Below are positions 19,201 to 54,961 of a stretch of DNA of 64,000 nt, one piece after another (the first letter of the stretch is position 1; each line of letters begins with the position of its first letter). The stretch lies in the NCBI GenBank assembly GCA_965112155.1, contig OZ218103.1. One strand, given 5' to 3'. The notes below the pieces were generated by a model. The model searched no databases, was not told the origin of the DNA, and saw only the letters and a program-made list of their open reading frames with translations. The position numbers and the translations under genes were made by a program. The DNA comes from Podarcis liolepis. Taxonomy: Eukaryota.

Positions 19201-22200
19201 AAAATGTTGTGAAATGTTGTGGGGTAATGGAACTATACAGAAGGAAGGACAAGCACCAAGCATTGTGAGTAGACGAGGGAAGCCAGAACAGGGAAACCAT
19301 ATCCAGATTATTTTTCCCTGAAGTTTGAGCAGAACACACTCATCCTTGAAATCTGAGTTCAGATTTTAAATTCACCTGTAGCTGGTAAATTCCAGAAGAG
19401 TAGTGATGTTGAGTTTTTGCAGCAAAAACAAAAGTCTTTTACATTTATGTATTGGTTGAGGTTTAAGGGCCATATCTCAGTGGCAGAGCATCTGCCTTGC
19501 ATAAGAAGGAGATAGAGAGCTACAGAACTTTTAAAAGACATCTGAAGGCAGCCCTGTATTGGGAAGTTTTTAATGTTTAATGTTTTACAATATTTTATAT
19601 GTGCTGGAAGCCGCCCAGTGGCTGGGGTATAAATAATGACATTATTGTTGTTATCAAGAAGGTCCCAGGTTCAATCCCTGACATTTCCAGCTAGAGCCAG
19701 AACTGTGTCCTTGCTCAAACCTTCGAGAGCTGCTGCCAGTCAGTGTAGACAGTACTGAGCTAGATGGGCCAGTGGTCTGACTCAGTATAAGGCAGTTTCC
19801 TATGTTCCTGCCTGTGCAATTGGGCCTGTGCATGTATGGGCACCTACCTCATATATTAAGTGGTGTGTGTGGTGAGAGGGAAATGCACAGCTGCATCTCC
19901 ACCAGAGTTTTTTGATCCTGGTATTTAGTATGTGCTCATTATTTTAAGTGTTTGGATAACCCTCACAAAGCAGTTTGTATAAATCATTTAAAATAACATG
20001 CTTCAATTAAAGTACAATGACAATGAACATAAACAGCAAGGGAAAAACAAAAGCCAGATAAAACCATCATTTGAGACTAAAAGACACTAAAGTGTATGGC
20101 TGAATGAAAAGATCCTCATTTGGTATGGAAAGTAAGTAGAATTAGCACCAGGCAGATCTCCTGGGGGGAGAGCATTGCAGAGACAGGGCATCACAGTAGA
20201 AAAAGCCCCATTGTACATCACCATCCATCTTGCTTCGGATGGGGGAGGGCACAAAAAGCCTCAGAGGATCTTAAAACCCTGGCTGGTTCATGTGGGAGGA
20301 AGTAGTTACTGAGGTATCTTCATCCCAAGCTGTTTAGATCTTTAAATAGCACAGTGAATTTGCTCTGGAAATCAATGCAGGAGCCAGTGCAGTTGTTTTA
20401 AGACTGGCAAGATGTGTTCCATATATCTCATCCCAAATAGTGCAAAGTATGGCAACTAGGTTACTAACTGACTTCCAAACTCTTCAAGGTCAGCCCCATA
20501 TACAATACATTGCAACAATCTGAATGGGATTTTCCTGGAGCATGATTAATTGTGGTTAGCTTGGTTGTACCAGCCTAGAGTAGTAAAAGGTATTTTGTAC
20601 CACTGAGGTTTCTTGGGCATCCAGAAGTAAGGCTAGATCTCATAGCACCTCCAGACTGTGTATCCAATCTACTAAGGCAGGCAAACCACCTATCAATAGA
20701 ACTTGTCATGACTGAGCTTCAGGACATTGGTCCTCATGCAGCCGATTACGGGTTCCAGGCACCAATTCAGCACTTTTAAAGGCCACAGCACCAGCTGAAT
20801 TAGAAGGAAAAATGATAGAGGTGGGTGTCAAGTGCGCCCTAAATTCTCAAATCTCACTCAGTAGTTTCATGTAGATCAGGGATAGAGAACACATGACCCT
20901 CCTGATGTTGGTGGACTCCCAACTCCCATCAGTCCCAGCCAGTGTGTGTAATAATCAGGGATGATGGGAGCTGTACTTCAACATCTGGAGAACCACTGGT
21001 TCCCCATTCCCAAATAGATGTTGGTATAACATAGGAAGGGCAGACTAGAGTTGTGTGGAACAACATGGCATGACTGTCATGGGTCACAGCAACAGTCCAG
21101 CACCATGACCTTCTAGAACTGATGATTCATGTTGGTATGGGATCGCCAAAGTGTGGTTCCCCTGTTCTCCCCCAGTGCAGCCAATCTAGAAGGATAGCAA
21201 TGTCAATAGTATTGAAAGTCATGAGGTGTATAGTTGAATTAGCAGGGTCTCATTCCCGTGGCATAGATCACTCATAAGGGAGACTAAGACAGTTTCAGTT
21301 CCAAAACCAAGCTGGAAACTAATCTGAAATGGCCTCAGAAAATTAATGTTGCTCTGGGGAGCTCCAGCCCTTTTCAGCACCCTATTTTCTAGGTTTTAGC
21401 ATGTGTCCTAAACAGTTACTCTTCTAGCATGCAGTATAATCATCATCATAATCATCATCACCAGAATCATGCTAGAACGTAACAAAGTAGACTGAGTTCT
21501 GAAGCCTACCTCTCACAACATTGTTATCAAGGCCTCTTTCACTTGTTCAACCTCCATGAGGTATGTTCTGTCATCTGCCTACAAATCTGTATCTGTTATC
21601 CTATGTAGAACATAGCAGAGGATTCTTAATATGGCTAGGACATGATGTTTGTTAGCGAATTTTACACTTTACATTATCTTTTGGTATGAAAAGGGATTGT
21701 TGATGGCTACCTCACTGCATCCCATGAAGTGTTACAACCATGGTTTCATCTTGCACAGACAGGACACAACTTAGTGTGAGCTGGTTCCTTTGGCATTCAT
21801 CTGGGGAAAAGAATGCATCTAACTGGGTTATATGTTCATCTGCGCTCAGCAGATATTACTGCACTTAGGCTTTATTGGGACCAGGATATGTTATATTTTG
21901 TTGTCTTGGCCTTACTGTAAAATACTTTCTCTTCCATGGTGTATACAAACCTTCTTCCTATTTGAGGTATTTCATGTAGGCTCATGTCATGAGTTACAGT
22001 GGTACCTCAGGTTAAGAACTTAATTTGTTCTGGAGGTCTATTCTTAACTTGAAACTGTTCTTAACCTGAGGTACCACTTTAGCTAATGGGGCCTCCTGCT
22101 GCCGCTGCGCTGCCACCACATGATTTCTGTTCTCATCCTGAAGCAAAGTTCTTAACCTGAGGTACTATTTCTGGGTTAGTGGAGTCTGTAACCTGAAGCG

Positions 22201-31200: not shown

Positions 31201-34200
31201 CTGTACTGATAGCATTTGGCACATTAAACAGAGCAGCTCATGACTCTGCATTTTCTATCTTTCTAGGAGCACTTTCAGAGTGGCTGGCTGACCACCCTGT
31301 CATGATCAACAATGTCTTACCCCTGGTGCTACAGGCTCTGGGCAATCCTGAGTTGTCCATCTCTAGTGTCTCAACCCTTAAGAAAATCTGCCGTGAGTGC
31401 AAGTATGACTTGCCTCCCTATGCTGCCAACATAGTTGCTGTCTCTCAGGTAACTGAAATAATGGTCTAAAGATACATGGTTCTATGAGAACATGGAAGTT
31501 TAAGTCACTGACTAGTTTTGAGCTGTATGTAAAGCAGAGATCATTCAACAGGGCTTAGAGCAGTAGGAACATTCTGAGAAGGATATCTACGTGTGTATGT
31601 GAGATTTAGTGGAGTAAATATTTATTGCACATTGTCAGAATGGGAATTCTGACTGCATCTATCAGTTAAAATAACTTCAATCTTATCAGTTTGAAGATAT
31701 GTGTTCATCTGTTTTGGCAGCTGGCAAGGTGGATTGACTTTGAGCTACTTCTGCAGTGGAAATTTGGTCAAGATTCAGCTCAGCTTTCTGCTAAACTAAA
31801 TGCAGTCTTTGGTTTCCCCTTCACATTTCCTTCTAGAAGAGGAAAAATTATGCTTGCAGGGTGTGTGGAGGAAGCAGAACTGTTGACCCTTGCTGCTGAC
31901 ATTATGGAGCTTGGGAGACAAGCTGTATGAAACCACTGCCTATAATGAATCACTGATGACTACTTATCCATTATGAAGCATCCTTGAGAAGGGTTGGCTT
32001 TCACTGTAGGAGGGAGAGGGTGCTTATTGATTATTTATTCAGATATTTATAAGCTGCATTTTAAGATCAAGCCCTCACCGGTATGTAAAAAGATTGATGC
32101 AAGATGACAATGGGTACATCAGACAGGTGTACAACCACTATGAGAAAGCTGCTCTGAATCATACAAGTCTTTAACACTCTTCAGGAAAAGCAGTAGAGAG
32201 CTTTTCAAGGCCCTCTTAAAAGCATGTATGGAAGGGGCCAAGCTTAAGTTAATCAGAAGGGAGTTAGCCTTCTCTTGCTTATCCACTTGAAATGTCACAG
32301 CGCCCATGCTCCAGATCAGTGTTTGTCTCCCAGAGTTGTTAGTTGATATTGTGGTTGGAGCATTGTTAAACGTTTCTGCTGTGGGGCGAGTACTCACTTT
32401 CTCACATCTTTCCTTCTGTAGGATGTGCTAATGAAGCAGATTCACAAGGTAAGATACTTATACTCCTCCCTGGTGCAGAGGGTCAAAGAGTGTACAGAAT
32501 ATATGGTTACCTATCAGGTTATTATTTCCGAAGTATTGAGCATTCCAGTCAATGAGAGGAGGATTAGAGGGATTGGTGAAATTGCATGCATGTCTCCCAA
32601 ACAGTTTTGATCAGGAGTGGGGAATCTGTGACCCTCCAGAAGTTCCTGGCCATTGGCTTTGCAGGCAAGAAATGTTGGGAGTTGGAATCCAAAAGCATCT
32701 GTAGAGTCACACATTTTTCTTTCCTGGTTTAGATAGACATCCGTTATGTTTCCAGGCATTCCAAAGCTGCATGAAAGAGTCTTATTTGTGTTTATCTGTG
32801 ACTCAGGGCTCTGACAATGGCTATTTTGGTGCTAAGTTCTGGCACTAAACACAGGTTTCTGTGTTGAGACTTCCAGAAGGCATAGCTAAGACTTAAGCAT
32901 TAGAGTTGACGAAAAATAGACGGAGAATAAACTCCAACTGAGATGTAGTGTAGCATGACTTTCTGAGGATAATAGGAGAAACTAAGAATGTTGTCCATCT
33001 TGTTCTGCCCCCAGACAAGTCAGTGCATGTGGCTGATGCAAGCTCTGGGCTTCTTGCTGTCTGCCCTCCAAGTGGAGGAGATTTTGAAGAATCTGCACTC
33101 ACTGATTACTCCTTACATCCAGCAGCTGGAGAAGCTGGCTGATGAAACGGTGAGCTACTCCCCTTTCTTGGTGGTGGCTGTTTGCCAACCTTCTTTTAAG
33201 AAAGAATAGAGCCTGTTGTGTGTAAAACTCTACTCTTCTTGTTGCAAGTTGTGCCTTGTTTTAACCATACCTCTCTGGTCTTGCAAGCCTCTCATTTCTT
33301 ATCTCTGTCCTCTGGTTTTTAAATTCCTTCCCCCTGCCCTGTTTTCCATTATGCTTCTGAAGTCAAGAACGGAGTGGGTGAGAATTGGCTGGGGGGGGGG
33401 GGAATCAATCACTAGACTATGCTTCACAGTTGTGCTGTCCATTCTTGCTGCCAGTCTGGGACATCTGATGTGAGTGGCCCATATCCTGGATCTACTGTAA
33501 CTGCTATAGTGATGCCTTGCCTTGCAGCCAAACCCCTCCAACAAGTTGGCCATCATCCACATTCTGGGCTTGCTCTCCAACCTCTTCACCACATTGGACA
33601 TCAGTCATCATGATGATGATCATGAGAGCTCAGAGGTCAAGAAGCTGCCGGTGCCTCAGGGCCCCAATCCGGTGGGTGTTACATGTGTCTGAGTAGTTCT
33701 TTTTATACATTAGGGCATACAACTCCATGTTTATTTGGCTGTGCCTCTTCCCTGCCATGTAACTGTAGGCAGCTTCTTCTAACTCTTGATGGGCAGTAGC
33801 ATAGAATGGTTGAAGGGTTGTGAAAATAGGTGGTGTACAACATAGCACTGTGTGTGTGTGTTACTTTAACTATTGGAATGAGCCTGCATAGATTAGCCAC
33901 TTCCTCACTGCAGATTGTGAGCTGTTTGACGTGACTACTGAGTGATCAGAAGAGAGCTCAGAATGTCCCTTCAATTGTGTATATTTTCTTTTTAAAAAGA
34001 AGTGAGGGCAGCTACACATCTGGTATTGTGAGACTTTTGAAAACTACTCTGGCATAATATGAGTTGTGGAGCAATCTCTAGAGAGGCCTCTAATACCATC
34101 TTTTCATCCCTGGATCTGAATGGTTTTGAGCTCTCTCCTCCTCCTCCTCCTCCTCCTCCTCCTCCTCCTCCTCAAACTGTGGGAGACGAAGCCAGTTTCG

Positions 34201-37200
34201 TAATTCTCTTCTATCTTCTTCCTCTAGGTGGTGATGGTGCTGCAGCAAGTCTTCCAGCTTATCCAGAAAGTGCTCAGCAAGTGGCTGAATGATGCCCAGG
34301 TTGTGGAGGTAATGCATGTTCTAGGTTAAAAAACAAGCAACACTTTGCCCACATATCTATAGTTAGATAGGAGATTCCCAGGTTGGCACTGGTGGTTGTT
34401 GACAGAACTTGAAGAAGGTATGTTTGTGATGTTGGATAAGTCTCTCTTTTCAGTTGATTCCCACATTCTGTTCAATTTGGTATTCTACTTTTAGGCTTAG
34501 GAGTTTGGCCGACCAAGCCAAACTTACCTCACAGAACTGAATTGGTGGTGGGTGGAGGAAACTATATATGGCACCTCAGGCTTCTTTGAGGAAAGGTGAA
34601 GTACAGAATCAGTAGATATTTAGCTAAGGAACAAGTTATTTAACCAGTCCTCCCTTGACGCAGCCCTTCCTCTTCCCACAGTCTGTGTGCTCCATTTTTG
34701 AAAAGTCTGTGAAGACCCTCCTGGATGACTTTGCACCCATGGTGCCTCAACTGTGTGAGATGCTGGGCCAGATGTATAGCACCATTCCTCAGGCATCTGC
34801 AATTGATCTCACTCGACAGGTAAGTCTAAGTACTAGAATTCCTGGAAGCTACTAAGTTTACAATGGAGGCTGATAATCTGTTGAGTAATTCCTACCCTCT
34901 GTACTGTTCCTATGCCAGCTGGTCTCTGTCTCCTTTGTTGTGTTAGCAGCAAGGATCTTGTTGATGTTTTCAGACAGAGAACAGGCAGGTAGACTTACAC
35001 GGGGGATAGCTAGGGGCTACAAATATGGGATGGAATGGGTCATACCGGACTGCTCTGGCTTCAATGCCCTTTGTATTTTATATCCCCAGCTGGTTCACAT
35101 CTTTGCCCATGAGCCTGCCCATTTCCCACCTATCAAGGCGCTCTTTCTGCTCGTCACATCAGTTACGCTAACACTGTTTCAGCAAGGTACGTGTGCTTGG
35201 GCACCTTCAGTCTTGTGAGGCTGCCACGTTGAAAACTGCTGTTCCTGGTTTCAGCTGTTCAGACTCGACTATAAGGTGTGTGCAGGTGGGGGGAGGGAAC
35301 ACCTTCCTCAGGTCATGGCCGTGCTCGTTCAGTTCCAAAAGCTTTTAGCTGGTACAGATGAAGATGAAAAGCTCTTGCTGAGGTGGACTCTCTGGCATGC
35401 TTCTCCTCAGGTATCAGTGCCTGAGTGGACAGTAGTGCTGCCATTTCCCCCTCTTCTCCTGTCCTTCATGACTGGAAATCTGCCCTCCCCGTGTCAGATT
35501 CCAGGGTTAGAGCCCCAAGAGGAAGATGAAGCGAGCAGTCGGCTCTGAGTAGAAAGCAAGAATCACTCAGGAGTGCGTTGTAATGTCTTTCAGTTAACCC
35601 CATCACTGCTCTTTATGGAGTCGACCATATTCATCAGGGTTTTTTTTCCCCTGTGGCCTAAATAAAACATTTGTCATGTGGACTCTGTATCCTATCTCCC
35701 TGGTTCTCCAGCTCAAGGGATTCCTTTTACAGCTTTGTGAAATTCCCAGCAAGTGTTTGGACTTGCCTTTGCATGGAACTGCCATATTGACTCCATGTTG
35801 ACCCCAGCTGAGATGAAAAGCTTGGAATACATGTACAGATCCAGTCAGCATGGTTGGTGGGGTATCTGCTTCCTTCTCCAGGTCCTTGTTTGAACTCAGA
35901 ATTGATGGGGAGCAACTAGTGCTTGGAGTGATGCCCTGTTACTGCCTGACTGGGTCAGGCATAGCCAACATGGAGGAAGAGAATTCTCAGATCCAGGAAA
36001 GCTTATGTGATAATAAATTTGCTAAATTTATAATGCCACAAGGCTTTCTCTTTTGTGGAATGGAAGTATGCTTACCAGCAACCACGCTGGCCTTTCCCTG
36101 CAGAAAATGCCAGAAAGTTGGGTTCTTCCCAACTAGGTAGGCATGTGGACATGGATGTTAGGAAAATACTGTGCTGGGACTGTCCATCCGGCACTCTAGT
36201 GGATTTCCAAGACTTTGTGCCTACTCCATGTCAATACTGGATTTGTTGTTTGACTCTGGAGTTGTCTTTCAGGACCAAGTAAATCATGATAACATGTATC
36301 CAGTTCAAATGTGCTCGTTCTCCACATGAAGCTGGTGTCCAGTTAGCTCCTGCTTCTCTCTTCCCCTGCTAGGGTGCAATGAGCTCTCCCCTTCCTATCC
36401 TTGGTGCTTGGCAGGGGACTCTGGGCACAGGCCTATTCCTTTGCACTTTCTTTCTGTTCTTGGGTTTCCAAGCTCCATGATTTTTGTATGTTTTGTTTCT
36501 TTAACTTGCTTCAAGCTGCTCATGTGCCTTCCCTCCTCAACCCACCCCCTTGCACCCTCCCCTTCCCTTACTCCTGTTTTCACTTGTAAATTCTTTCTGT
36601 ATCACATAACTATATGATGTTGAGTTGCTGTTTGTATGATTTTTCTCTTCAGTTACATCTTTATTATATTTTTAGGGCCCAGGGATCATCCTGATATTGT
36701 TGATTCATTTATGCAACTCCTGGCACAGGTGTGTTTTAGTTTCTTATTCATTCACTTTCTGTTCTCTCTCTTTCTCTTTTTTAATTCAATTTAAACCTAT
36801 TTTTAGCTTTCTGTTGACAACGTTTTTTCCTTTTAGTTGAATATCGAGTTTCTCCATCTGTTTCCGTGGAAGTTGAAAACAAAACATTCTCCTTTTTCAT
36901 AGGTGTGAGTTTGCCCTTTTCATTCCCCAAGGGGCAATACCTAGTGATGCAACAAGGCTTGTAGGTTGGGTTTGTTTTCAGGTCATGTGGTGTGGCCTTG
37001 CCCAGGAGGGGGCTGCTGAAAAATGTTAATGTAGTTCAAGAGCTCTGGCAGCAGCATTCCAGTCCTGGTATAGATCTGCGTGCTTTTCTGAAGTGACTCT
37101 GACTTCTTTACAAATGCTGGCAAGTCCATAGTTTCTGTTTATTAGGTAGGAGTGATGTATTCAGTAACTTGGTGGATCTGGGAGGGGCAGCTGATCTAAT

Positions 37201-40200
37201 GGGCAAGGATAGCAGATGAGCCTTGTCTCCCGTGTTTGACCCCAAAACCCTTCTGCACTCCAGCATTTCTGCCAAGGCTTCCTGTGTCTGGTGTTTTGTC
37301 CCCCCCCCCCAAGATTGTGCATCTTCCATAGAGCTCTGTCTCTAATGCTGTAATGACATCATGCACAGGGCAGGGCAAAGCAGTGGTGGTGGAATACAAA
37401 CAGAGGCTGGTGGGTATCATTCCCTGGAGTAAGTGAAGGATGAAGCACCCCCAGCAAGTGGATTAGAATGAGCAATCCCTAGACTGAAAATAAGCTGCAG
37501 CACTAAGAACTGATGGAGCAGAATTGGGTGGGATCTTATATATTGATCTCCTGACTGTAATAAGATGCTCTCTCGTTGGCTCTGGTTTATTGTTGCCTAA
37601 TGGGGTTTCTGTATACTGCGATGGGGGAAGTGTCTGAGTGCTTAGCTCCCCCTTGTGGCAGTTAATACAGATGCAAATATGGGAGGCAATGTTGCTAATA
37701 GGTAAAGGTAAAGGGACCCCTGACCATCAGCTAATACGTTACTGTAAATCTCGCACTTCTCTTCAGTAACACAGTAACGAACTTCCAGAAAATTCTGAAA
37801 TTTGACAACAGCAAATCGCAAAATTAAAATGCCACCCTTTAGAGTTCTTATTCTTGTTTTGTCATCATGTTAAGGAGATGTCAGCTAACAGTGTACAGTT
37901 AAATATCAAATACTGAGATCAGTTATAATTATATAGGTGGAGCCCTATGGTGGATCCATGTTCTCAGGAAAGGGTTGGAACAATCTCATCCTAGGAGGGG
38001 GATAGGGAGTAGCTTTAGCCAGATGAAGGAAAAGGCAGTTGGAATGGGAGATGTGAAGAGAGGGGACTAGGAGAAGCCCCTGGGACATCCAGACACAGTT
38101 GAAAGCCCCACAGTAGCTCATGCGGTTCGACATGGAACAACTTGGGACCCCAGATCTTCTGACTGACTGCATCCAGATGAGACCTAATCACCAGCCAATA
38201 TTCATCCTGAAGAGTTAAAAAATGCAGCACTGTGTCTGGGACAGTGGGTGTCATAGTTTGGCCCATGCTGGAAATTAAAGCAGTAGTGTTTCAGTGGACT
38301 CAAAACAATGCTATTAATACTTTTTTATATTGTATGTCTTCCTCTCTTGCATATATATATATATACACACACACTTTCCTCCCTTGGTTGAATAAATATT
38401 GTTTGTTTGCCTCCATATACTTTGAGAGAAGCTCAAATTAGAAGTTGCCTGGGTTTGGGCTGATTTAGCTACTAGTGCCCAGTATGTTTTGTTCACCACT
38501 TCTTTTGGAGATGTGAAAGCTGGTGGTCTGGAGACACTGCACCCTCCATCTTGGGGTCACTGGCGTTCTCATTGTCTCTTATTCTACTTCATCTGTGAGC
38601 CTAAGTCCCATTGCACTTTTGCTATCTCTCAGCATTCACATTAAAACTTAACACACACCCCAAAAGAGGAGAGAGAGGCAGCTGATATACTGGTTCTTCC
38701 CCATATTGTCATTAGCACTTTCATTCTTTCTTTGAGTAAAAAATAAAATACTACCTCCTGGTCCGCCAGTCCCACAAAACAGCTTACAATAAGATACAAT
38801 AAAATTCTGAAGCAATATTTGAAACACTTGTAACTAAAAGATTAATTACAGTAGTCCAGCATTTGAAACTCTTCATCTTCCAACTGCCTTGCTAAAAAGA
38901 TGTTTGGGCCATGCACCAAAATGCATCTTAGCAGACTCTCTAGAGAGATACTTCCAAGGGCAGGCTGCCATCACCCAAAGAGTCATGCTCTTTGTGGCTA
39001 CCAGCCTACATATACCTGTAGTACCTGGAGCAAGAACTCAACTAAAACAAAAGAGGCAGAGTGGATTCATATGGGAGAATATGACCCTTGAGGTAACATG
39101 GTTCCAAACTACGCATGGTTCTGGATTCTGTATGAGGCAAGGAGGACTGGGTTGCATTTGAAAGTGCAGCTTCTGCAGTCTGCCAGTTTCCTATAATTTG
39201 CTGACATTGTCTCATTGGCAGAATGTCACCTATACCCTTCTCTCTTGGAGTAAGCCTAAATTGGCAATGCCCTAGAAGACTTACGTTAACATATGCTGTT
39301 TGTTTAACTTGCCCAACTGGTGGCCCATGCCCAGGCTTGTTCTGTCCCAACAACCAAGTTAAAAGACACTGGATATAGGAATATGTGAGAAATCTGAAAT
39401 TCGAGGGGAATGTTCTCTCCTCATGCTTAGTGTGGAGACAAATCAGTAGGAAAATTCTTCACAGCATCAGCATCTGGCATGCACTTCCTTTGGAGCCATC
39501 TAGTGAGACTAGAATACAGGCCTAGCAGAAGGGTCAGTTTGCTAAAATGAGAAGACCATTGAGTATGTAACAACACTGCTTGTCCATTCAAGTGGACTGG
39601 TACATTGTGAAACATAAATGTTGTGTCTGTGGGCAGAATTATGCAAGAATATATACCATTTTCCTTTCTTTGTTCAAAAATCAAATAATCTTGATTTGCA
39701 AGTATTGCCCCACTAATGCCTATATTATCCCTAAATCAGAAGACCAGCAGCCTTGGCTTAAATATACATTTGAACTTTCCTGAAATTGTGTGTGTGTACT
39801 GCCATGTAGAAGAAAAAAAGAAGTGAAGAGGAAAGGGAGACGCAAAAGAATGATCTTTTGTTGGAACAATTTTAATTGCTTAAAATGTCAGAACACTAGA
39901 GTCATTCCTTTAGCATAGGTGTTTAGATGAAAATTTTAAGTTTGTTCTTAGAGGTCCTAGTTTTAGCGCACCACCATAAGGTTGCTTTGATACAAAGGTA
40001 GTTGTTGAGAGAGACAAAGGGTTAGTGTCAAGTCATGAGCATATTGCGAGCTAGCACTGAGGTTCCTTTAACTGGCTGTCATTATGTGGTATATTGGCTA
40101 AATTGTTTATTGAAACCTGTATAGGTATTAATATAATTTATTCTGCATGGTTTAATTTGCATCACTTTGGATATGAGCAAATGTTTCAGTAATGGAATAC

Positions 40201-43200
40201 AAAGATGTGTGGGCTCAGACATTTGATTTAATTGGCCTTTTTATCTATTTCTATACTGGTGGCTCACAATGCACTGTGTACTAAGCAAATCTGTTTCCAC
40301 TTAGTTGGCTGTAACACATTGTGGGAGGAATTCAACATAGCACTATTGCAATCATTCTGTCAAAGCAAGCGCTTCATCTTGCCATATGGAATGATGCCCC
40401 CTTTCTTCCTCCTGCAGGCTGTTTTGGGGGGGGGGGTCTCGTGGCCCTTCTCCAGCCCATTTGGGTGCAGGGAGAGGGAAGAGGGGAAGCCCCATTGCTG
40501 TAGTTCCGCTAGTGGGGCTCATTAGTTGAAACTGGCCCTCAATATGTAAAACAGTACTTGGAGGGATGCAAACAAACAAAACATTCTTTACTAGGGTGAT
40601 GGAATAAAAATCATTTTTAAAACTTTAGAGTATTAGCAATATTCCGTAGCAGTTTTAACAGTAGCATTTGCAATACAAGAACCATCGAAAACCCTGCAGA
40701 TTAGCACCAAGCAGATATTTACCATTGCATGACAGAAAAGGACATAACATTGGATCATAGGAAGATGCCTTACACCAGGTCAAACCATTGGTCCATCTAG
40801 CTCAGTATTGTCTACACTGATTGGTAGTGACTCTAACAGGTTTCAGGCAGGGGACATCCCCAGCCCTACCTGCAGATGTCGGAAATTGTACCTGAGAGCT
40901 TCAGTGTGCAAGGCAGATGCTCTGCCACTGAATTACAGCCCTTCCCTTAACTCTCTTTGTTCCTTCCACCTGGGTGATGAACAAGTGGACAATCAAGGCA
41001 TGTAGAGTGGAAACTGAGAATACAAAGCTTTGGAAGCTAGTCATTGCAGCGATTGGTATACAGTTGCAGGTACAACAAGCAATACTTCTGCAGCCCCGGA
41101 AGATCGTGCTTCATTGAAAAAGCACATACTTCACATAGCTATATAGGAGTATAAGTTGTTTAGGGCCCTGTTTGTTAATAGGTCTCACCTTGTTTTGTGA
41201 ATGCCATGGTGGAGCAGATGTTTAGGTCCTTCAGGAATGGAAGTAACAGTGGGGACTGCTGTCCAAGGTGCTGAAATGGATAGGCTTGCAGAATTCTTGC
41301 CTGTGCTTGCTGTCTATGGTGCTGAAATAAGCTGCGAGGCAGCAATATTTATATTAAGTCACAAGTAAAATCAGCCTTTTTGTAGTTTAACAGGAATACT
41401 GAAACTAGATGAGCCCCCTTTCCTGGTGGTGTAGAAAAGAATTCCCACATCTCTAGATTTCTTCATTTGTAGCAAAGTAGGAATCCTAGTAGGTTGTTTC
41501 TAGGTAATGTTTCAATTACATGTGTCTTCAGAGGCTCTTAATTACCTGGAGTCCTTGATGCCCTTGACTTCAGAAGTGTCCTACTTATGTTCTTTCCCTT
41601 CCTGCCATATCTGACTTACTGTGCACCATGGCTGATGGCCAGGTAAGTGCACATGGGGGTCTTGGCCAGGGAGCTATTCTGTGGCACTTTTTTGCCTCTG
41701 GCTTGCCAGAGCTGTGTTTATTGTCTGTGTATGTGTGTGTACCTTGCAGGCACTCAAACGGAAACCTGACCTGTTCCTGTGTAGCAGCCTGGATGTCAAA
41801 GCAGTATTCCATTGTGGTGAGTAGGCAGGCCCCGTAAGACTAAGCTATCCAAAAATTGAGCTCCCTTGATGCAATTGGGAAAGCTGATATAGCCAAATGA
41901 GGCAGTGTTTCTTAAAGGTTCAGATATATGACAGCAGCCTGCATGTTTGATGTAGAAACACCCCTCAAATCAGACCAGCTGAAGCTCCATATAAAGTCCT
42001 TGTGCTTGGAGAAGGGAAGGCTCCTTTCCTTCCCCACTCTTGTGGAAAGCTTTGAATTGTGTTAGCTGAGTCCTGAAGTGTTGCTTTCCCTCTAGGTGTG
42101 ATCTCCTTGAAGTTCCCTGAAGCACCAACTGTCAAAGCTGCCTGTGGCTTTTTTGTGAGTGTTTTGCTTTTGCTAGATCTGCCATTGGCCAATGGTACAG
42201 GCAGAGTTGCGTTTCAGCCAAGTGGCTTGGAAGCACTTGTGCTGGGACAGGATGGAGAAGCACCCAGAACTGGTGAGAGGGAGCCGCCTCGAAATTCCAG
42301 AAGGGAGCTTCTCCTTTCATAAGTTGCCATTTGGGCCTTTTTATTTTCTTTTGCAGTTGGGATTTTTTGTATGGAGGCATTTTCTCCTAACTGTATATGC
42401 CTCCACTCTGTTTGGACATGTATACAGGAATGTTCTCGTCTCCCACATGGGAGATGGCTATATATCTGAGTTATAGCAATATAGTTTGCATCAACTCCTT
42501 CTCACTGTTTCTTACAGACTGAGTTATTGCCACGTTGTGGGGAGATTCCACCGGTGGGACAAGTGGTACATGAGAATGGCAAAATGCTGCTGCAGGCTGT
42601 GCTTGAGGTAAGGAGTGGGGCTTTTCAAGCTAAGTCAGGGACAATTAGAAGGAATAACTGGAAGGAGCCATGCTCACAGATAAGCTGCACTTATTCCAGT
42701 ATCTTTTATTAATTCAGCTCCCTTCTAACCAGAATATCCCTGAATGATTTGCAGCCTGATCTAGTATTTAATGTCTTTCTTGGAAGCGTGTTCCACTAAG
42801 TTCAGTGGTGCTTACTCCCAAGCAAGTGTGCCACCTTGGCCACTTCCTTTTTAAAAACATTTCCTTGATGCAATCTGCTGGAGCCTTCTTAGGTTTGTAA
42901 TGTAATGCTTCCTTCAGTGCAGTCTCCTGGGAGGATTATTGTCTGGTGTTAACTGGATTTGCTCCATCTGCAGGGTGTAGGTGGCCAGGCTGCACGCAAC
43001 TTGATGGATCACTTTGCTGAGATCCTCTTTGCTCTCAACAAGCACTGCTTCAGTTACTTGAGTGTCTGGATCAAGGAAGTGATGCAGCAGGATGGTTTTC
43101 CATCAGCCCGTGTCAGCCCTGAACAAAAGGAAATCTTCAGCCAGCAAATTCTCAGGTGAACTTTCTCTTGAAGACTTTTCTGGAAGACTGAGTTGGGGAA

Positions 43201-50015: not shown

Positions 50016-53000
50016 CTAAGACCAAAACAACAACAACAATCAAACAAGAACAATGATCATGGCATAAATGATTTCCCCAAGCTGAATTCCAGACACCACT
50101 CTGGAAGAGAACAGAGCTTACAGTATATTCAAGATTATGGATGAAAGAGCCCACGGGGCCCACTGCCCCACTCGTTACTGCAACTGTAAATGGAGGAAGG
50201 CGACTAGGCTGCTAATTGCTATTCTGACACTAGCATAAACCTTTGAAACATTCACCACATAACAGACTTCAAAACAGCCATTTTCATCTCCCAGGAACAA
50301 CCATTAGTCACAAGAAAGGTCCTAACAGATGAGATTTGCCACCATTTGTGTGGACCATTAACATAATCCATTCCCGACCCCTCGGACACATACCTGCTGG
50401 GCTACTCTCAGCCATATGCATATAGCTGCGGCAGGTCACAGAAGTGCCAGAGCTTGGCTCTGGGTCTGGTGCTGTAGAAAGACAAGTTGAGCGTAGCTCG
50501 CCGGTGATGAGTGAAATGCTGGGTTCACTGTCCACCTCTGAAACCTTGTCTGGGAAAGGGGTGTGCGCACATGCTCCTGCAGGCAACAGCAAGGGAAAGA
50601 GTAACAGCTAAGCTTGGCCCATCCAGAATCATGCCCTACTTTTACCCACCTAAGGATGATCAAGACGTGCAGAATTAGCACATGGAAAAACAGCAGTGGG
50701 TGGGGTTGGCATTACTCGCCTGGCTTCCCAACATTCCCAACTTGATAAGAGCATAGCTACTCTGATGCTTCCTTTCCTGCACCTACACCACACTGAGCTC
50801 CCCACTGCCTTGCCCTCCATTGACCACCATTTCATATGGCAAATGTGGAGAGGACTATGGGAGGTAAGCATAGCCCAATTATATTTGCTTGCACAATGGA
50901 ACTTCCCCACTTCCTCCTTTCCCAAACCAGCTCTGAAGGGTTAGGGGAACCCCTAGAATAGATTCAGGGCAAGAGGAGGGGGGAGTTTCATTGCGCGAGT
51001 GAAAGTCTTTGCACTGACAGGACATGTTACTATTTTGGATACAACCCTGTGTATTTGAATTATCCCCAATGTAGAAATTGTTCCCTGCCGCTGGTCTTTG
51101 TGTGGGTGTAGGGAACTTTATGGTCATTGCTGCTGCAGCAGACTATGCCTTCAGGGCAGGCCCAAGAGCATTGGTAGAGCTGTGCAGCTTTTATGAGTCT
51201 GAAATTGCAATTCATCGTGAAACTCAAGTTATTATAATAAACAACTTTCAAACCCTTATGCCTGCAGAGAGAATTTTGGAAGTGTGTGACCAAACATAAT
51301 TTCCAGAGTCTGGTGTGAAAGGAGCTCACTGGTTGTTGCCTCTACTCATTTCTCCAGTTACGAAGCCTACTATTACCTGGTAGGAGGTGGCGGAAATCTG
51401 TGACATAGCTGCCTGTCCAGGTCCGTGCTGGATTGCATGCCATCTCCAGCTCGTAGGGTGTGACCACAGGCCGGTAGAAGTCAGCTGAATCAAGCAAAGA
51501 GTTCTGTGGGCAGGCTACCAACACAAAAATGTCCACCTCTAGAAAGTTTGCCAGCTTTGCAGGGTTGGGTTTACCCACAGCCAAGGTATAGGCCCGTTTG
51601 CCTGCCCGCTGAATGATGCCACGCAGATGCTCCAGAACAGACAAGTAGTCTGCCACACCAAGAGTGCCCACCACAATGCCCACTACTTGGGCATCCCGTG
51701 CCCGCTCCACTAGATAGAGGCGTCGCCTCAGGGCCCGGTTCACATCCAATGTTTCCCGTCGGCCTTGTCCTGTCTGAGGATTAAAGGAGCTGAAGGGACA
51801 CCGGTTCCAGCTCAGCATGAAGTTTGTGAGTTCTGGGCCTTCACAACCCACGTAGAACATGGCGTAGTTGTCAAGACCATGCTGACTGTCTACTACAAAG
51901 TTCCGCCCAAATTTCTGCACCAGCCCGGGAACTGGCTGAAGTTCCTTGTTATCCAGTTGAGAGAAAACTACATTGGGATAAATGGGGTGCAGCTGAGAGG
52001 CCAGGTTATCTGAGGGGAAGAGAAATGAAAAGTCATTCAATTTAGAGACAATAACTGTCACATCTCACTGTTCCAAATACTCAGCAGGCCTCTTCCATGG
52101 ACAGGGAAGGGCCCTTGTGCTAGACACTAGGTTTAAAGCTGTGATGGGGAACTCCTATCAGCCTCATGCAGCATAGCCAGTGGTCAGGGATGATGAGAGT
52201 TCTAGTCCAACAACATCTGGAGAGCAATAGGTTCCCCATCCCTGATTTAAAGGATGTAAACAGAGGGGAGTTAACTGAAAGCTAATATTACAAGGAAATA
52301 TTACTTCTGTGGTCCTTTAAAAGAGAACAACCCCCTACAGCCGCCAAATCAGAAATATAAATTGGAACATTGACAGGAGTACTGTTTTGACTTTTCTCAT
52401 TTTCATAGAATCATAGAACTTATAAAAGCCTCTTCGGCAGGTATCTGTGCATTAACTGACCACATTCCTAGTTCATTCAAACTACAAAGGAGTAAACTGA
52501 ACTGATTAATTTATGTGGTTTTGCCTTTGAACATTAGCATGCAGGTCTATTAGCTTTGCTCTGAAGAATGTTATTGTTGAGGAAACTGCAAACTAGTATC
52601 CTAGTGGCAAATGAGGTGGGGAGCACAGAGAGAAATAGGCATTTCCTGGTTAATCTAGCCCTGAGGATAGTAGAGAGGGTTAAAAGCTGGGACTGAGTAA
52701 CATTGGAAGGCAGATAAGACATAAAGGGCAGGACTGGCAAGGAGAGCACTGTTTGCGGTTAGAGGATGCCCACTAGCTTTTTCCCATCCTGGCCTGATGT
52801 ATCTTTTGAATACCACCCACCTCCAACATTGTGATCCCCATGGTCTCACCTAGAGAATGAAAATAGGCCACTTCATTCAGCACAACCACATGAGCTAGGG
52901 GGTCTGGATACAACTCCCGGAAGACTTCTGTGCAGCGCGCCACGTCTAGTTGTTTGCGGCCAAACACATGGAGCACGGGCAGCTTGCGGCAGGGACTCAA

Positions 53001-54961
53001 GCAGGCAGGGCCGTAGTGCACCACAGCCTCAGCGCCCACATGCTCTGCTGCCACTTCATCCACGCAACAGCTAAAGAAAAGCAACAGCATTAGCTATAGA
53101 GGGCAGCTTTCCTCAAAACACCTACCACCTCTAGCACACACAAAAAATGCTTCCTTTGTAGTAAATGGGTTGCCATTGTAGAGACTGGATTTCCCCTGTC
53201 ACCAGCTCACTCAGCATGCATGGAGCCCCAGGCCTGACAGCAGATGATAAAAATACTCTGTTACCAACACCAAAGATGCAGGAACTGGGGAGCAACTAAT
53301 GATCCCAAAGTCCTACTCTCTTGTCATAAATAGTCCCCCCACCCCAGCAGAGGCAGTCAAGAGACTGCTGAACATCCAGAGGCTGACATATTACTATAGA
53401 ACCCCTTGAAAATGCAAGCCTGCACTATAGTCCTATGCACGTTCTTAGCACTAAGTTCCATGTTTTCAATGAGGCTTACTCCCAAGTGTCTATAGGACTA
53501 TGGGCCTGAGCTTCTATCATGTGTTTATGTGGAAGGAGGTTCCTGCTGTGACCTCACCTGCCGTATGATGTGTCCCCCAGAATGTACATTTTGGCGCCAG
53601 TTGCTGCTTCCATCTTCCTAGCAATGCTTGCTGAATCTGGCAAGAGTTCATCGGGAAACTGAAGAGCAACCTACAAAACAAACCCAAGATAATTATTCAG
53701 GACATGTCCACTGTACACAGCTATCAGTACTGTGGGTTTCCTGGGGAATTAGGTTTTGAAGGAAAAGGTCCCATCCACACGGACAGGATTTTTTCTTGTA
53801 AGTCTAATTGCCATGAGGGGAGGGGTTTGAAGGGTAAGGGTGGCAGCACTGGGGAGAGGGTTAATTTACCCCTCCATCTGCATTGTGACTCCCTCAAAAA
53901 CCTGCATACTGAGTGAAATAAATTTCCTCTAAGCTTAATTGCAGCAGGGAAGGGCAAAGAGAAAAGCAAAAAAAAAAAGAGGAGGAAGAATGGGTGGGGA
54001 GAGAGAATAGAATGGATGGACATACATGTGTAAGCAGTGATGTGGGTTTGCCAGTCAATTCTGAACTGGAAAAAAATCCTTTGAAAATTAGGATAGTGTG
54101 AACAGGGCAATATGTGATGCCCTAGAACACTGGCCTTCAACAGGTGGACTTGGACCCACTGCTGGGTCACGGCCTGATCCAAGATGGGTCACAACAGGAG
54201 CATTACCACCATGCAAATATATGATAAAAGATTAAGAAATGGGTTTCCATAGTATGTTGGGGTTAAAAGTGGGTCCTGGGTCTGAAAAGGTTGAAGAATA
54301 CCTGCCTTAGAGAATGGTCTAATTTGTTTTTTTTATTTTACTTGCATTTAGCAAACAAGAGCTAAAAACTTGAAACTGCCAAGTTTGCCTAATGCTGTAT
54401 TTGCAGCTGGCATCCATTCATTGTTGCTCATGACCTTATGAAACATATTTTTTCCTTGTGGAAAAATAAAGCACCAAAAAGCACCTCACATCACTGGTGA
54501 AAAGGAAAAGGTGGGGGGAGAAGAGATGTGCCTTGGGCAGCCTCAGCTCTCCCATCGCTGGCATGTTCCCCCTGGGAGATGTGGCCCTTGGGGGAGGATT
54601 CCACATCTCAACCTTAAATACTGTAGTGTGTGAGCTGTTTCTACATATTTATTTGTTTGACATACTTGGTAAACAAAACCTTTTTAAAGTCCCCCATATT
54701 TAGTGCCCCAATACTTGATTATTTGGGGCGGGGATGTCCACTAACTCTAGGGGAAGAACTGACATTCATGCCTGTAGCTTTCTGGCGAAGGGCAAACTAC
54801 TGTCTCACCTTAGTGAAGCCATTATCAGATACAAATGCAGCTGCTCTCTCCAGTTCATAGAACTCTTCCAGCCTGGTGGTTGGGGGACATCCACTTGCTT
54901 CTGCAGGAATCACGGTCCGCTGCATAACCTCAGCACCATCACTGCTGAATGCTGTTGCCAT
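49891..54961 (-). CDS. DPH2: Diphthamide biosynthesis protein 2, complete CDS: complement(join(49891..50015,50394..50576,51377..52009,52850..53070,53558..53670,54809..54961)); 475 aa
   Basis: GCCACCATGG start; GT-AG introns with consistent phases; total 1428 nt. Motifs [47 protein letters not shown] and the C-terminal SWRGLE...[12 protein letters not shown] are typical of DPH2. Confidence 0.96.
50394..50576 (-). CDS. DPH2: DPH2 coding exon 5 (ACAHTPFPD...[10 protein letters not shown]...SSPA)
   Basis: ctgcag|GA...G|gtatgt. Confidence 0.93.
51377..52009 (-). CDS. DPH2: DPH2 coding exon 4
   Basis: cctcag|AT...G|gtaata; ORF track 51342..52061. Confidence 0.96.
52850..53070 (-). CDS. DPH2: DPH2 coding exon 3 ([10 protein letters not shown]...YFHSL)
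   Basis: ctttag|C...G|gtgaga; ORF track 52773..53090. Confidence 0.95.
53558..53670 (-). CDS. DPH2: DPH2 coding exon 2 ([10 protein letters not shown]...GDTSYG)
   Basis: tgtag|GTT...AG|gtgagg. Confidence 0.95.
54809..54961 (-). CDS. DPH2: DPH2 coding exon 1 ([15 protein letters not shown]...[18 protein letters not shown])
   Basis: Consensus Kozak; donor AAG|gtgaga; upstream acceptor tttgtag| at 54978. Confidence 0.93.

What the first reader, a model, noticed from the sequence alone, without database searches (positions are those of the whole stretch)
41255..41326. Tandem REST/RE1 silencer pair deep inside a housekeeping importin gene
Seen: two co-oriented 21-bp RE1 matches, 51 bp apart, in IPO13 intron 15 (TTCAGCACCttGGACAGC and TTCAGCACCatAGACAGC on the minus strand). 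They are not inside any repeat I could recognise. Known: RE1 is a long, information-rich motif bound by REST, which silences neuronal transcription units in non-neuronal cells. Inference: a double site about 40 kb from the IPO13 promoter points to a nearby REST-controlled internal promoter or enhancer, or to long-range control of a neighbouring gene.
Basis: partly seen in the sequence, partly recalled or inferred. Interest (0 to 1): 0.8.

Follow-up and report, generated by a model that had tools for sequence, protein, structure and literature searches.

The report
Tandem REST-binding motifs in lizard IPO13
Two strong, same-direction binding motifs for the neuronal-gene silencer REST sit 51 bases apart in the last big intron of a lizard importin-13 gene. 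This is a known kind of double site at a locus where mouse REST also binds, and what it does here could not be tested.

Summary
Two co-oriented RE1/NRSE 21-mers lie on the minus strand at 41275..41255 (core 16/16) and 41326..41306 (core 15/16). Both fit the published 17-nt RE1 expression and are the only such matches in 64 kb (0.02-0.05 expected). They sit in IPO13 intron 15, 424-495 nt upstream of exon 16. I found no repeat, transposon protein remnant or known RNA over them.

Mouse ChIP data list almost the same 21-mers as REST-bound, including the A-at-position-12 variant. Head-to-tail RE1 pairs within 100 bp are a described architecture (27 in human; SNAP25, L1CAM, KCNN4). Mouse also has a REST-occupied RE1 about 0.9 kb downstream of Ipo13, and IPO13 is developmentally regulated and neural-enriched, not plainly housekeeping.

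The likeliest reading is a real REST-binding double site acting on IPO13 itself. It may act on a candidate in-frame exon 250-370 nt downstream.

This is a new member of a known kind, of modest interest.

The parts
41255..41275 (-). RE1/NRSE site 1, TTCAGCACCTTGGACAGCAGT: full canonical core, left half TCAGCACC, 2-nt linker, right half GGACAGC
   Evidence: It is 20/21 identical to the mouse 21-mer TTCAGCACCTTGGACAGCACT (PWM 0.9546), which is REST-bound in ES and neural stem cells.
41306..41326 (-). RE1/NRSE site 2, TTCAGCACCATAGACAGCAAG: core with A instead of G at motif position 12, which the published expression allows as R
   Evidence: Its first 18 nt are identical to the mouse ES-cell ChIP-PET motif TTCAGCACCATAGACAGCGCC. 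GTCAGCACCATAGACAGCTCC (PWM 0.9386) is enriched 3.3, 2.5 and 2.0-fold at FDR 0 in three mouse cell types.
41276..41305 (.). 30-nt spacer between the two motifs, with no similarity to the 30 nt that follow site 1
   Evidence: 7/30 identical; local alignment score 5.0 against a shuffle mean of 5.15.
36729..41749 (+). IPO13 intron 15 (5,021 nt), which holds the pair 4.5 kb in and 424-495 nt before exon 16
   Evidence: tblastn of lacertid importin-13 P0392 and other orthologues on the window; acceptor cag| at 41747-41749; mini-exon 9.
41750..41816 (+). IPO13 exon 16 ([22 protein letters not shown]..)
41574..41642 (+). Candidate extra exon (69 nt, 23 codons, no stop) with acceptor ttcag|A, donor CAG|gtaagt and an internal caccATGG at 41628. 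It is in frame with exon 16 both as a cassette and as a first coding exon. No RNA evidence.
   Evidence: This is sister finding s1-847458.
40750..40945 (-). tRNA-derived SINE, the nearest recognisable repeat. Its 5' end lies about 310 nt from the pair, so the pair is outside it.
   Evidence: A 74-89% identical copy lies at 19465-19808; the tRNA-like head is readable.

Best explanation
The element is a genuine head-to-tail tandem RE1 module, that is, two REST-binding sites. In cells that express REST (non-neuronal cells, stem and progenitor cells), the zinc-finger domain would occupy one or both motifs. Through REST's known partners (Sin3-HDAC at the N terminus, CoREST/HDAC/LSD1 at the C terminus) it would set up a local patch of repressive chromatin in IPO13 intron 15. 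The most probable target is IPO13 itself. The effect would be either mild damping of a gene whose expression is highest in neural lineages, or silencing of an alternative exon or start lying 250-370 nt downstream. This would be the lizard counterpart, at a different position, of the REST-occupied RE1 about 0.9 kb downstream of mouse Ipo13. Shown here: the motifs, their non-chance pairing, their place in the gene, and that near-identical motifs are REST-bound in mouse. Inferred: binding in the lizard, the repressive outcome and the target.
For: Motif quality and rarity come: two matches, 0.02-0.05 expected per 64 kb, both on one strand 51 bp apart. At those rates I calculate about 0.015-0.1 chance same-strand pairs within 100 bp in a whole genome of about 1.5 Gb. 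The 1.5 Gb size is my assumption; the rates are. Mouse in-vivo data list near-identical 21-mers as bound, including the position-12 A variant; AGACAGC occurs 30 times against 900 for GGACAGC in the ES-cell canonical list. Tandem head-to-tail pairs within 100 bp number 27 in human against 0 in random sets, all head to tail (P = 7e-9). The pairs in SNAP25 and L1CAM recruit REST better than single sites (PMC1557810). The same RE1 expression was built from human, rodent and chicken sites and works in Xenopus, so squamates are bracketed. At the mouse Ipo13/Dph2 locus, RE1 mus8253:15 shows ChIP-chip enrichment of 5.2, 2.5 and 3.5 (FDR 0) in ES cells, neural stem cells and fibroblasts. It has 9 and 6 ChIP-PET tags, and Ipo13 rises 1.22-fold with dominant-negative REST in neural stem cells. 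IPO13 is developmentally regulated and neural-enriched. No repeat, transposon domain or known RNA explains the sequence.
Against: There is no binding, chromatin or expression data for this lizard. Conservation beyond near-identical relatives is unknown: six coded organisms hold the stretch at 0.72-0.84 of words, too close to be informative. Many predicted RE1s are not occupied; 521 of 1,166 were commonly bound in the mouse ChIP-chip. Only a small share of bound genes respond to loss of REST, and the mouse Ipo13 response is small. The 3' tails (AGT, AAG) lack the favoured GCC. The region is CpG-poor (GC 0.41). The frog RE1 list has no ipo13 entry. Without a repeat library or the whole genome, a transposon origin is not excluded.
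Confidence: 0.55

Rival explanations
1. The pair gates a REST-controlled internal promoter or regulated exon. It would silence, outside neurons or germ cells, a transcript that starts or splices in at 41574-41642. That transcript would encode either an N-terminally truncated importin-13 (MADGQ followed by exons 16-20) or a 23-residue insert.
For: The candidate exon has a good acceptor, a consensus donor CAG|gtaagt, a caccATGG start context and an open frame matching exon 16. The pair lies 250-370 nt upstream, a typical promoter-proximal distance. A truncated inhibitory IPO13 isoform is cited for mammals (those papers were not read in full).
Against: There is no CpG island. Several upstream ATGs lie between the pair and 41628. 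The exact ORFs are not in the protein collection. No fetched IPO13 model carries this insert.
Confidence: 0.15
2. The pair is a neutral by-product: an old local duplication or chance motif pair with no regulatory effect, whether or not REST touches it.
For: RE1 turnover is frequent and many RE1-like sites are unbound or without effect. The pair sits in a CpG-poor, 5-kb intron that also holds a SINE. Similarity at motif positions is circular, since both sites were found by motif matching.
Against: Two matches this good, 51 bp apart on one strand, are expected about 0.015-0.1 times per genome by chance (my calculation from the rates, assuming about 1.5 Gb). A neutral duplication old enough to erase the spacer (7/30) should also have eroded the 14 specified motif positions, of which 13 are identical.
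Confidence: 0.2
3. The pair is transposon-borne: it belongs to a squamate repeat family that carries RE1-like sequence, as LINE2 does in mammals, so its position in IPO13 is accidental.
For: About one in seven human RE1s overlaps or flanks a LINE2, and RE1s occur in the LINE2 coding sequence. From general knowledge, L2/CR1 LINEs are abundant in lizards. A SINE lies 310 nt away.
Against: There is no second copy in 64 kb, although the SINE has one. No reverse-transcriptase or endonuclease remnant appears in any frame. No terminal repeats or tandem array were seen. Only one other RE1 note exists among 718 annotated windows of this genome, which is weak evidence.
Confidence: 0.1

Closest known systems
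Tandem head-to-tail RE1 pairs (human SNAP25, L1CAM, KCNN4; 27 pairs within 100 bp in the human genome; Johnson et al. 2006, PMC1557810)
   Same: Two canonical RE1s lie less than 100 bp apart in the same orientation, one stronger and one slightly weaker. No fixed spacing is required.
   Different: The host gene is a nuclear transport receptor, not a classical synaptic or ion-channel gene. The location is deep in an intron of a lizard gene. Binding is untested. The spacer shows no trace of a duplication.
Mouse RE1 mus8253:15 between Ipo13 and Dph2 (Johnson et al. 2008, PMC2573930, Datasets S1, S4, S5)
   Same: This is the same locus, at the 3' part of IPO13. It is occupied by REST in ES cells, neural stem cells and fibroblasts, and Ipo13 rises slightly with dominant-negative REST.
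   Different: The mouse site is single, has a different sequence (GTCAGGACCACGGACAGCGCA) and lies about 0.9 kb beyond the gene end, upstream of Dph2. The lizard window has no RE1-like match there, and its DPH2-like gene is on the opposite strand. Orthology of the sites is therefore unlikely; positional turnover is an inference.
Transposon-derived RE1s (LINE2, Alu, LINE1; Johnson et al. 2006)
   Same: These are RE1 motifs placed in introns of genes with no neuronal role.
   Different: No repeat or transposon signature was found around this pair with the tools at hand.

Membership tests
RE1/NRSE (REST binding site) | Bipartite 21-bp motif: left half TCAGCACC, 2-nt linker, right half GGACAG(C); fits NTYAGMRCCNNRGMSAG | tested here: met
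   Both sites fit. Site 1 has 0 and site 2 has 1 mismatch to the 16-nt core. The expression was confirmed in PMC4430910.
RE1/NRSE (REST binding site) | Position-weight score above the validated cutoff (0.91 in Johnson 2006) | tested here: inconclusive
   The matrix itself was not available. Mouse 21-mers differing only in the last 1-3 tail positions or at position 1 score 0.9546 and 0.9386 and are bound.
RE1/NRSE (REST binding site) | Occupied by REST in vivo or in vitro (ChIP, EMSA) | not testable with these tools
   No lizard ChIP data. The reads tool was lost.
RE1/NRSE (REST binding site) | Represses a linked transcription unit in REST-expressing cells | not testable with these tools
   This needs a reporter or a perturbation experiment.
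RE1/NRSE (REST binding site) | Motif conserved in related species beyond neutral expectation | not tested
Only near-identical relatives hold the stretch. There is no ipo13 entry in the frog list.
Tandem RE1 cluster | Two or more RE1s within 100 bp | tested here: met
   51 bp start to start, with a 30-nt spacer.
Tandem RE1 cluster | Head-to-tail (same-strand) orientation | tested here: met
   Both are on the minus strand.
Transposon-derived RE1 | Motif lies inside an identifiable repeat copy | tested here: inconclusive
   There is no second copy in the window and no transposon protein domain. No repeat library or whole genome could be searched.
REST-regulated alternative promoter | Transcript 5' ends or a first exon spliced to downstream exons near the RE1 | not testable with these tools
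Only sequence-level exon signals exist.
REST-regulated alternative promoter | CpG-island or other core-promoter signature | tested here: not met
   GC is 0.41 around the pair. Window-wide CpG observed/expected is 0.22.

The most novel reading that the evidence does not exclude
The tandem RE1 acts as a switch for an intragenic start or cassette exon (41574-41642). Where REST is absent (neurons, perhaps germ cells), the locus would also produce a Ran-binding-deficient C-terminal importin-13 (MADGQ followed by exons 16-20) or a 23-residue insert variant. This would be a REST-gated inhibitory isoform of a transport receptor, maintained in squamates by a binding site that has moved relative to the mammalian one.
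Probability: 0.12. Interest if true: 0.6.

Novelty: new member of a known kind. Interest (0 to 1): 0.3.

Why it matters
If REST binds here, IPO13 would be a REST-associated locus in both mammals and squamates, with sites at different positions and in different numbers. That would be a concrete case of binding-site turnover at a conserved target. It would also offer a tractable test of whether tandem sites arise by selection rather than duplication, since the spacer shows no duplication trace. It would tie a neural-enriched nuclear transport receptor to the main neuronal-gene silencer. If the neighbouring candidate exon is real, the pair would also show REST controlling isoform choice inside a gene. 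If none of this holds, it is one more predicted RE1 in an intron.

Tried and rejected
- **RNA and cross-species reads.** Runs were found.
- **Exact look-up of ORFs** over the pair and the candidate exon: not in the collection. I therefore did not spend the last word search on them, because a blank would say nothing.
- **Chance.** Rejected on the counts.
- **Recent tandem duplication of a 51-bp unit.** Rejected.
- **Part of the neighbouring SINE.** Rejected.
- **LINE coding remnant.** No Pfam hit in any frame.
- **Nearby microRNA or other known RNA as target.** None found.
- **Literature link of IPO13 with RE1/REST in main text.** None. The link appears only in the supplementary tables of PMC2573930.
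- **Identity pattern between the two sites as evidence of constraint.** Rejected as circular.
- **Spliced gene model.** It was not joined or searched as one protein; exons were handled by reference only.
- **Human contigs.** No contig that I took for human was handled.

Full report
**What is there.** On the minus strand the window reads TTCAGCACCTTGGACAGCAGT at 41275..41255 and TTCAGCACCATAGACAGCAAG at 41326..41306. Against the RE1 core TCAGCACCNNGGACAG they have 0 and 1 mismatch. They are the only places in 64 kb within 2 mismatches. With up to 1 mismatch, 0.03 matches are expected and no shuffle gave two. Both fit NTYAGMRCCNNRGMSAG, the expression built from 32 proven sites in human, rodents and chicken and used for genome-wide searches (PMC4430910). 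That expression is expected 0.02 times per 64 kb from composition and 0.05 times in Markov simulations. At those rates I calculate 0.015-0.1 chance same-strand pairs within 100 bp in a whole genome of about 1.5 Gb (an assumed size). The pairing is therefore not chance.

**Where it is.** The gene is importin-13 on the + strand. Exon 2 carries the IBN_N and Xpo1 domains and exon 19 carries an importin-13 repeat. A lacertid importin-13 (P0392, Lacerta agilis / Podarcis muralis) matches the exons at 98-100%, so the window comes from a lacertid or a very close relative. Counting the 27-nt mini-exon at 32422-32448 gives 20 coding exons. It is 40.1 kb from the start codon and 424-495 nt upstream of exon 16 (41750-41816). 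A diphthamide-synthesis gene (DPH2 by position) lies on the opposite strand from about 52.8 kb.

**Is it a repeat?** The two copies agree at 17 of 21 motif positions but at only 7 of 30 spacer positions, no better than shuffled sequence. Tandem Repeats Finder reports nothing. A recent 51-bp duplication is therefore excluded. Agreement at motif positions is circular, because both sites were found by motif matching, and I give it no weight. A tRNA-derived SINE lies at 40750-40945 on the minus strand with a second copy at 19465-19808, but it ends about 310 nt from the pair. The region around the pair has no other copy in the window. It has no transposon protein remnant in any frame and no Rfam match. 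Without a repeat library or the rest of the genome, a low- or middle-copy repeat cannot be excluded.

**Would REST bind?** I could not obtain a weight matrix, so I calibrated against mouse in-vivo data in the supplements of Johnson et al. 2008 (PMC2573930).
- TTCAGCACCTTGGACAGCACT is 20/21 identical to site 1. It has a PWM score of 0.9546 and appears in the ES-cell and neural-stem-cell ChIP-PET motif lists.
- TTCAGCACCATAGACAGCGCC shares its first 18 nt with site 2 and is in the ES-cell list.
- GTCAGCACCATAGACAGCTCC (0.9386) is enriched 3.3, 2.5 and 2.0-fold at FDR 0 in ES cells, neural stem cells and fibroblasts.

A at motif position 12 is thus tolerated, though uncommon: AGACAGC occurs 30 times against 900 for GGACAGC. 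The motif is shared from frog to mammals, which brackets squamates.

**What is known about such pairs.** Johnson et al. 2006 (PMC1557810) found 27 human RE1 pairs within 100 bp against none in random sets, all head to tail (P = 7e-9). [quoted passage not shown] They also noted that spacing is not fixed, and they proposed tandem duplication as the origin. The present pair fits that architecture, except that its spacer shows no duplication trace.

**The locus in mouse.** The same 2008 data set lists an RE1 (mus8253:15, PWM 0.9345) annotated 3'-proximal to Ipo13 and 5'-proximal to Dph2 and Atp6v0b. ChIP-chip enrichment is 5.2, 2.5 and 3.5 (FDR 0) in ES cells, neural stem cells and fibroblasts. 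ChIP-PET clusters of 9 and 6 tags lie 0.85-0.95 kb beyond Ipo13. Ipo13 is 1.22-fold up with dominant-negative REST in neural stem cells. No main text links IPO13 with REST. IPO13 is not plainly housekeeping. Its expression is developmentally regulated in brain, and it is the most expressed importin in ES-cell-derived neural ectoderm. The lizard window has no RE1-like match downstream of IPO13, and its DPH2-like gene is inverted relative to mouse. The two sites are therefore unlikely to be orthologous. Turnover of site position at a shared target is my inference.

**Mechanism proposed.** In REST-expressing cells one or both motifs would be occupied. The known REST corepressors would deacetylate and demethylate local chromatin. 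The nearest plausible targets are IPO13 as a whole (mild damping, as in mouse) or a candidate exon at 41574-41642. That exon has an acceptor ttcag|A, a donor CAG|gtaagt and an internal caccATGG at 41628. Its 23 open codons are in frame with exon 16, either as a cassette or as a first coding exon. This is the sister finding s1-847458. There is no CpG island, and several upstream ATGs precede 41628. The promoter version rests on sequence signals only.

**What could not be done.**
Those places were sent to no search tool afterwards.
- The stretch is held by six coded organisms at 0.72-0.84 of words, too close to test conservation.
- The frog RE1 list has no ipo13 entry.
- The spliced gene model was never joined.

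**Verdict.** The feature is a new member of a known kind (a tandem RE1). The locus already appears as REST-bound in mouse data. Function in the lizard is inferred, not shown.
- Probability that REST binds: about 0.7.
- Probability that it binds and acts on IPO13: about 0.55.
- Probability that it gates the neighbouring candidate exon: about 0.12-0.15.
- Interest: 0.3.

Noticed in passing
window 41574-41642 (+): Candidate 69-nt exon with 23 open codons, good acceptor, consensus donor and an internal caccATGG at 41628. It is in frame with exon 16 as a cassette or as a first coding exon. This is sister finding s1-847458.
   Followed up: partly
window 36845-36895 (+): About 120-170 nt into intron 15, the sequence translates to [17 protein letters not shown]. 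This is 12/17 identical to part of a 37-residue insertion at the same exon junction in a hamster importin-13 model (P0294). It may be an old conserved alternative exon.
   Followed up: partly
window 32422-32448 (+): 27-nt mini-exon (DVLMKQIHK) that tblastn missed. It brings IPO13 to 20 coding exons.
   Followed up: yes
window 40750-40945 (-) and 19465-19808 (+): Two copies of a tRNA-derived SINE, 74-89% identical, in IPO13 introns.
   Followed up: partly
window 40950-42350 (runs X15-X20): Six small runs (about 100 million letters each, from three studies) of one coded organism hold 56-60% of the sampled words of this mostly intronic stretch. They may be capture, open-chromatin or RNA libraries. 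They were never laid.
   Followed up: no
window 52776-53093 (-): A DPH2-like diphthamide-synthesis gene lies tail to tail with IPO13, whereas the mouse tables place Dph2 downstream in the same direction. A GC-rich promoter-like region lies near 55.9-56.5 kb.
   Followed up: partly
protein P0303 (Chloebia gouldiae model): A 94-residue insertion at the exon 15/16 junction ends in read-through of the exon-16 acceptor. It holds no translated RE1 in any frame. This is weak evidence that the finch lacks the pair.
   Followed up: partly
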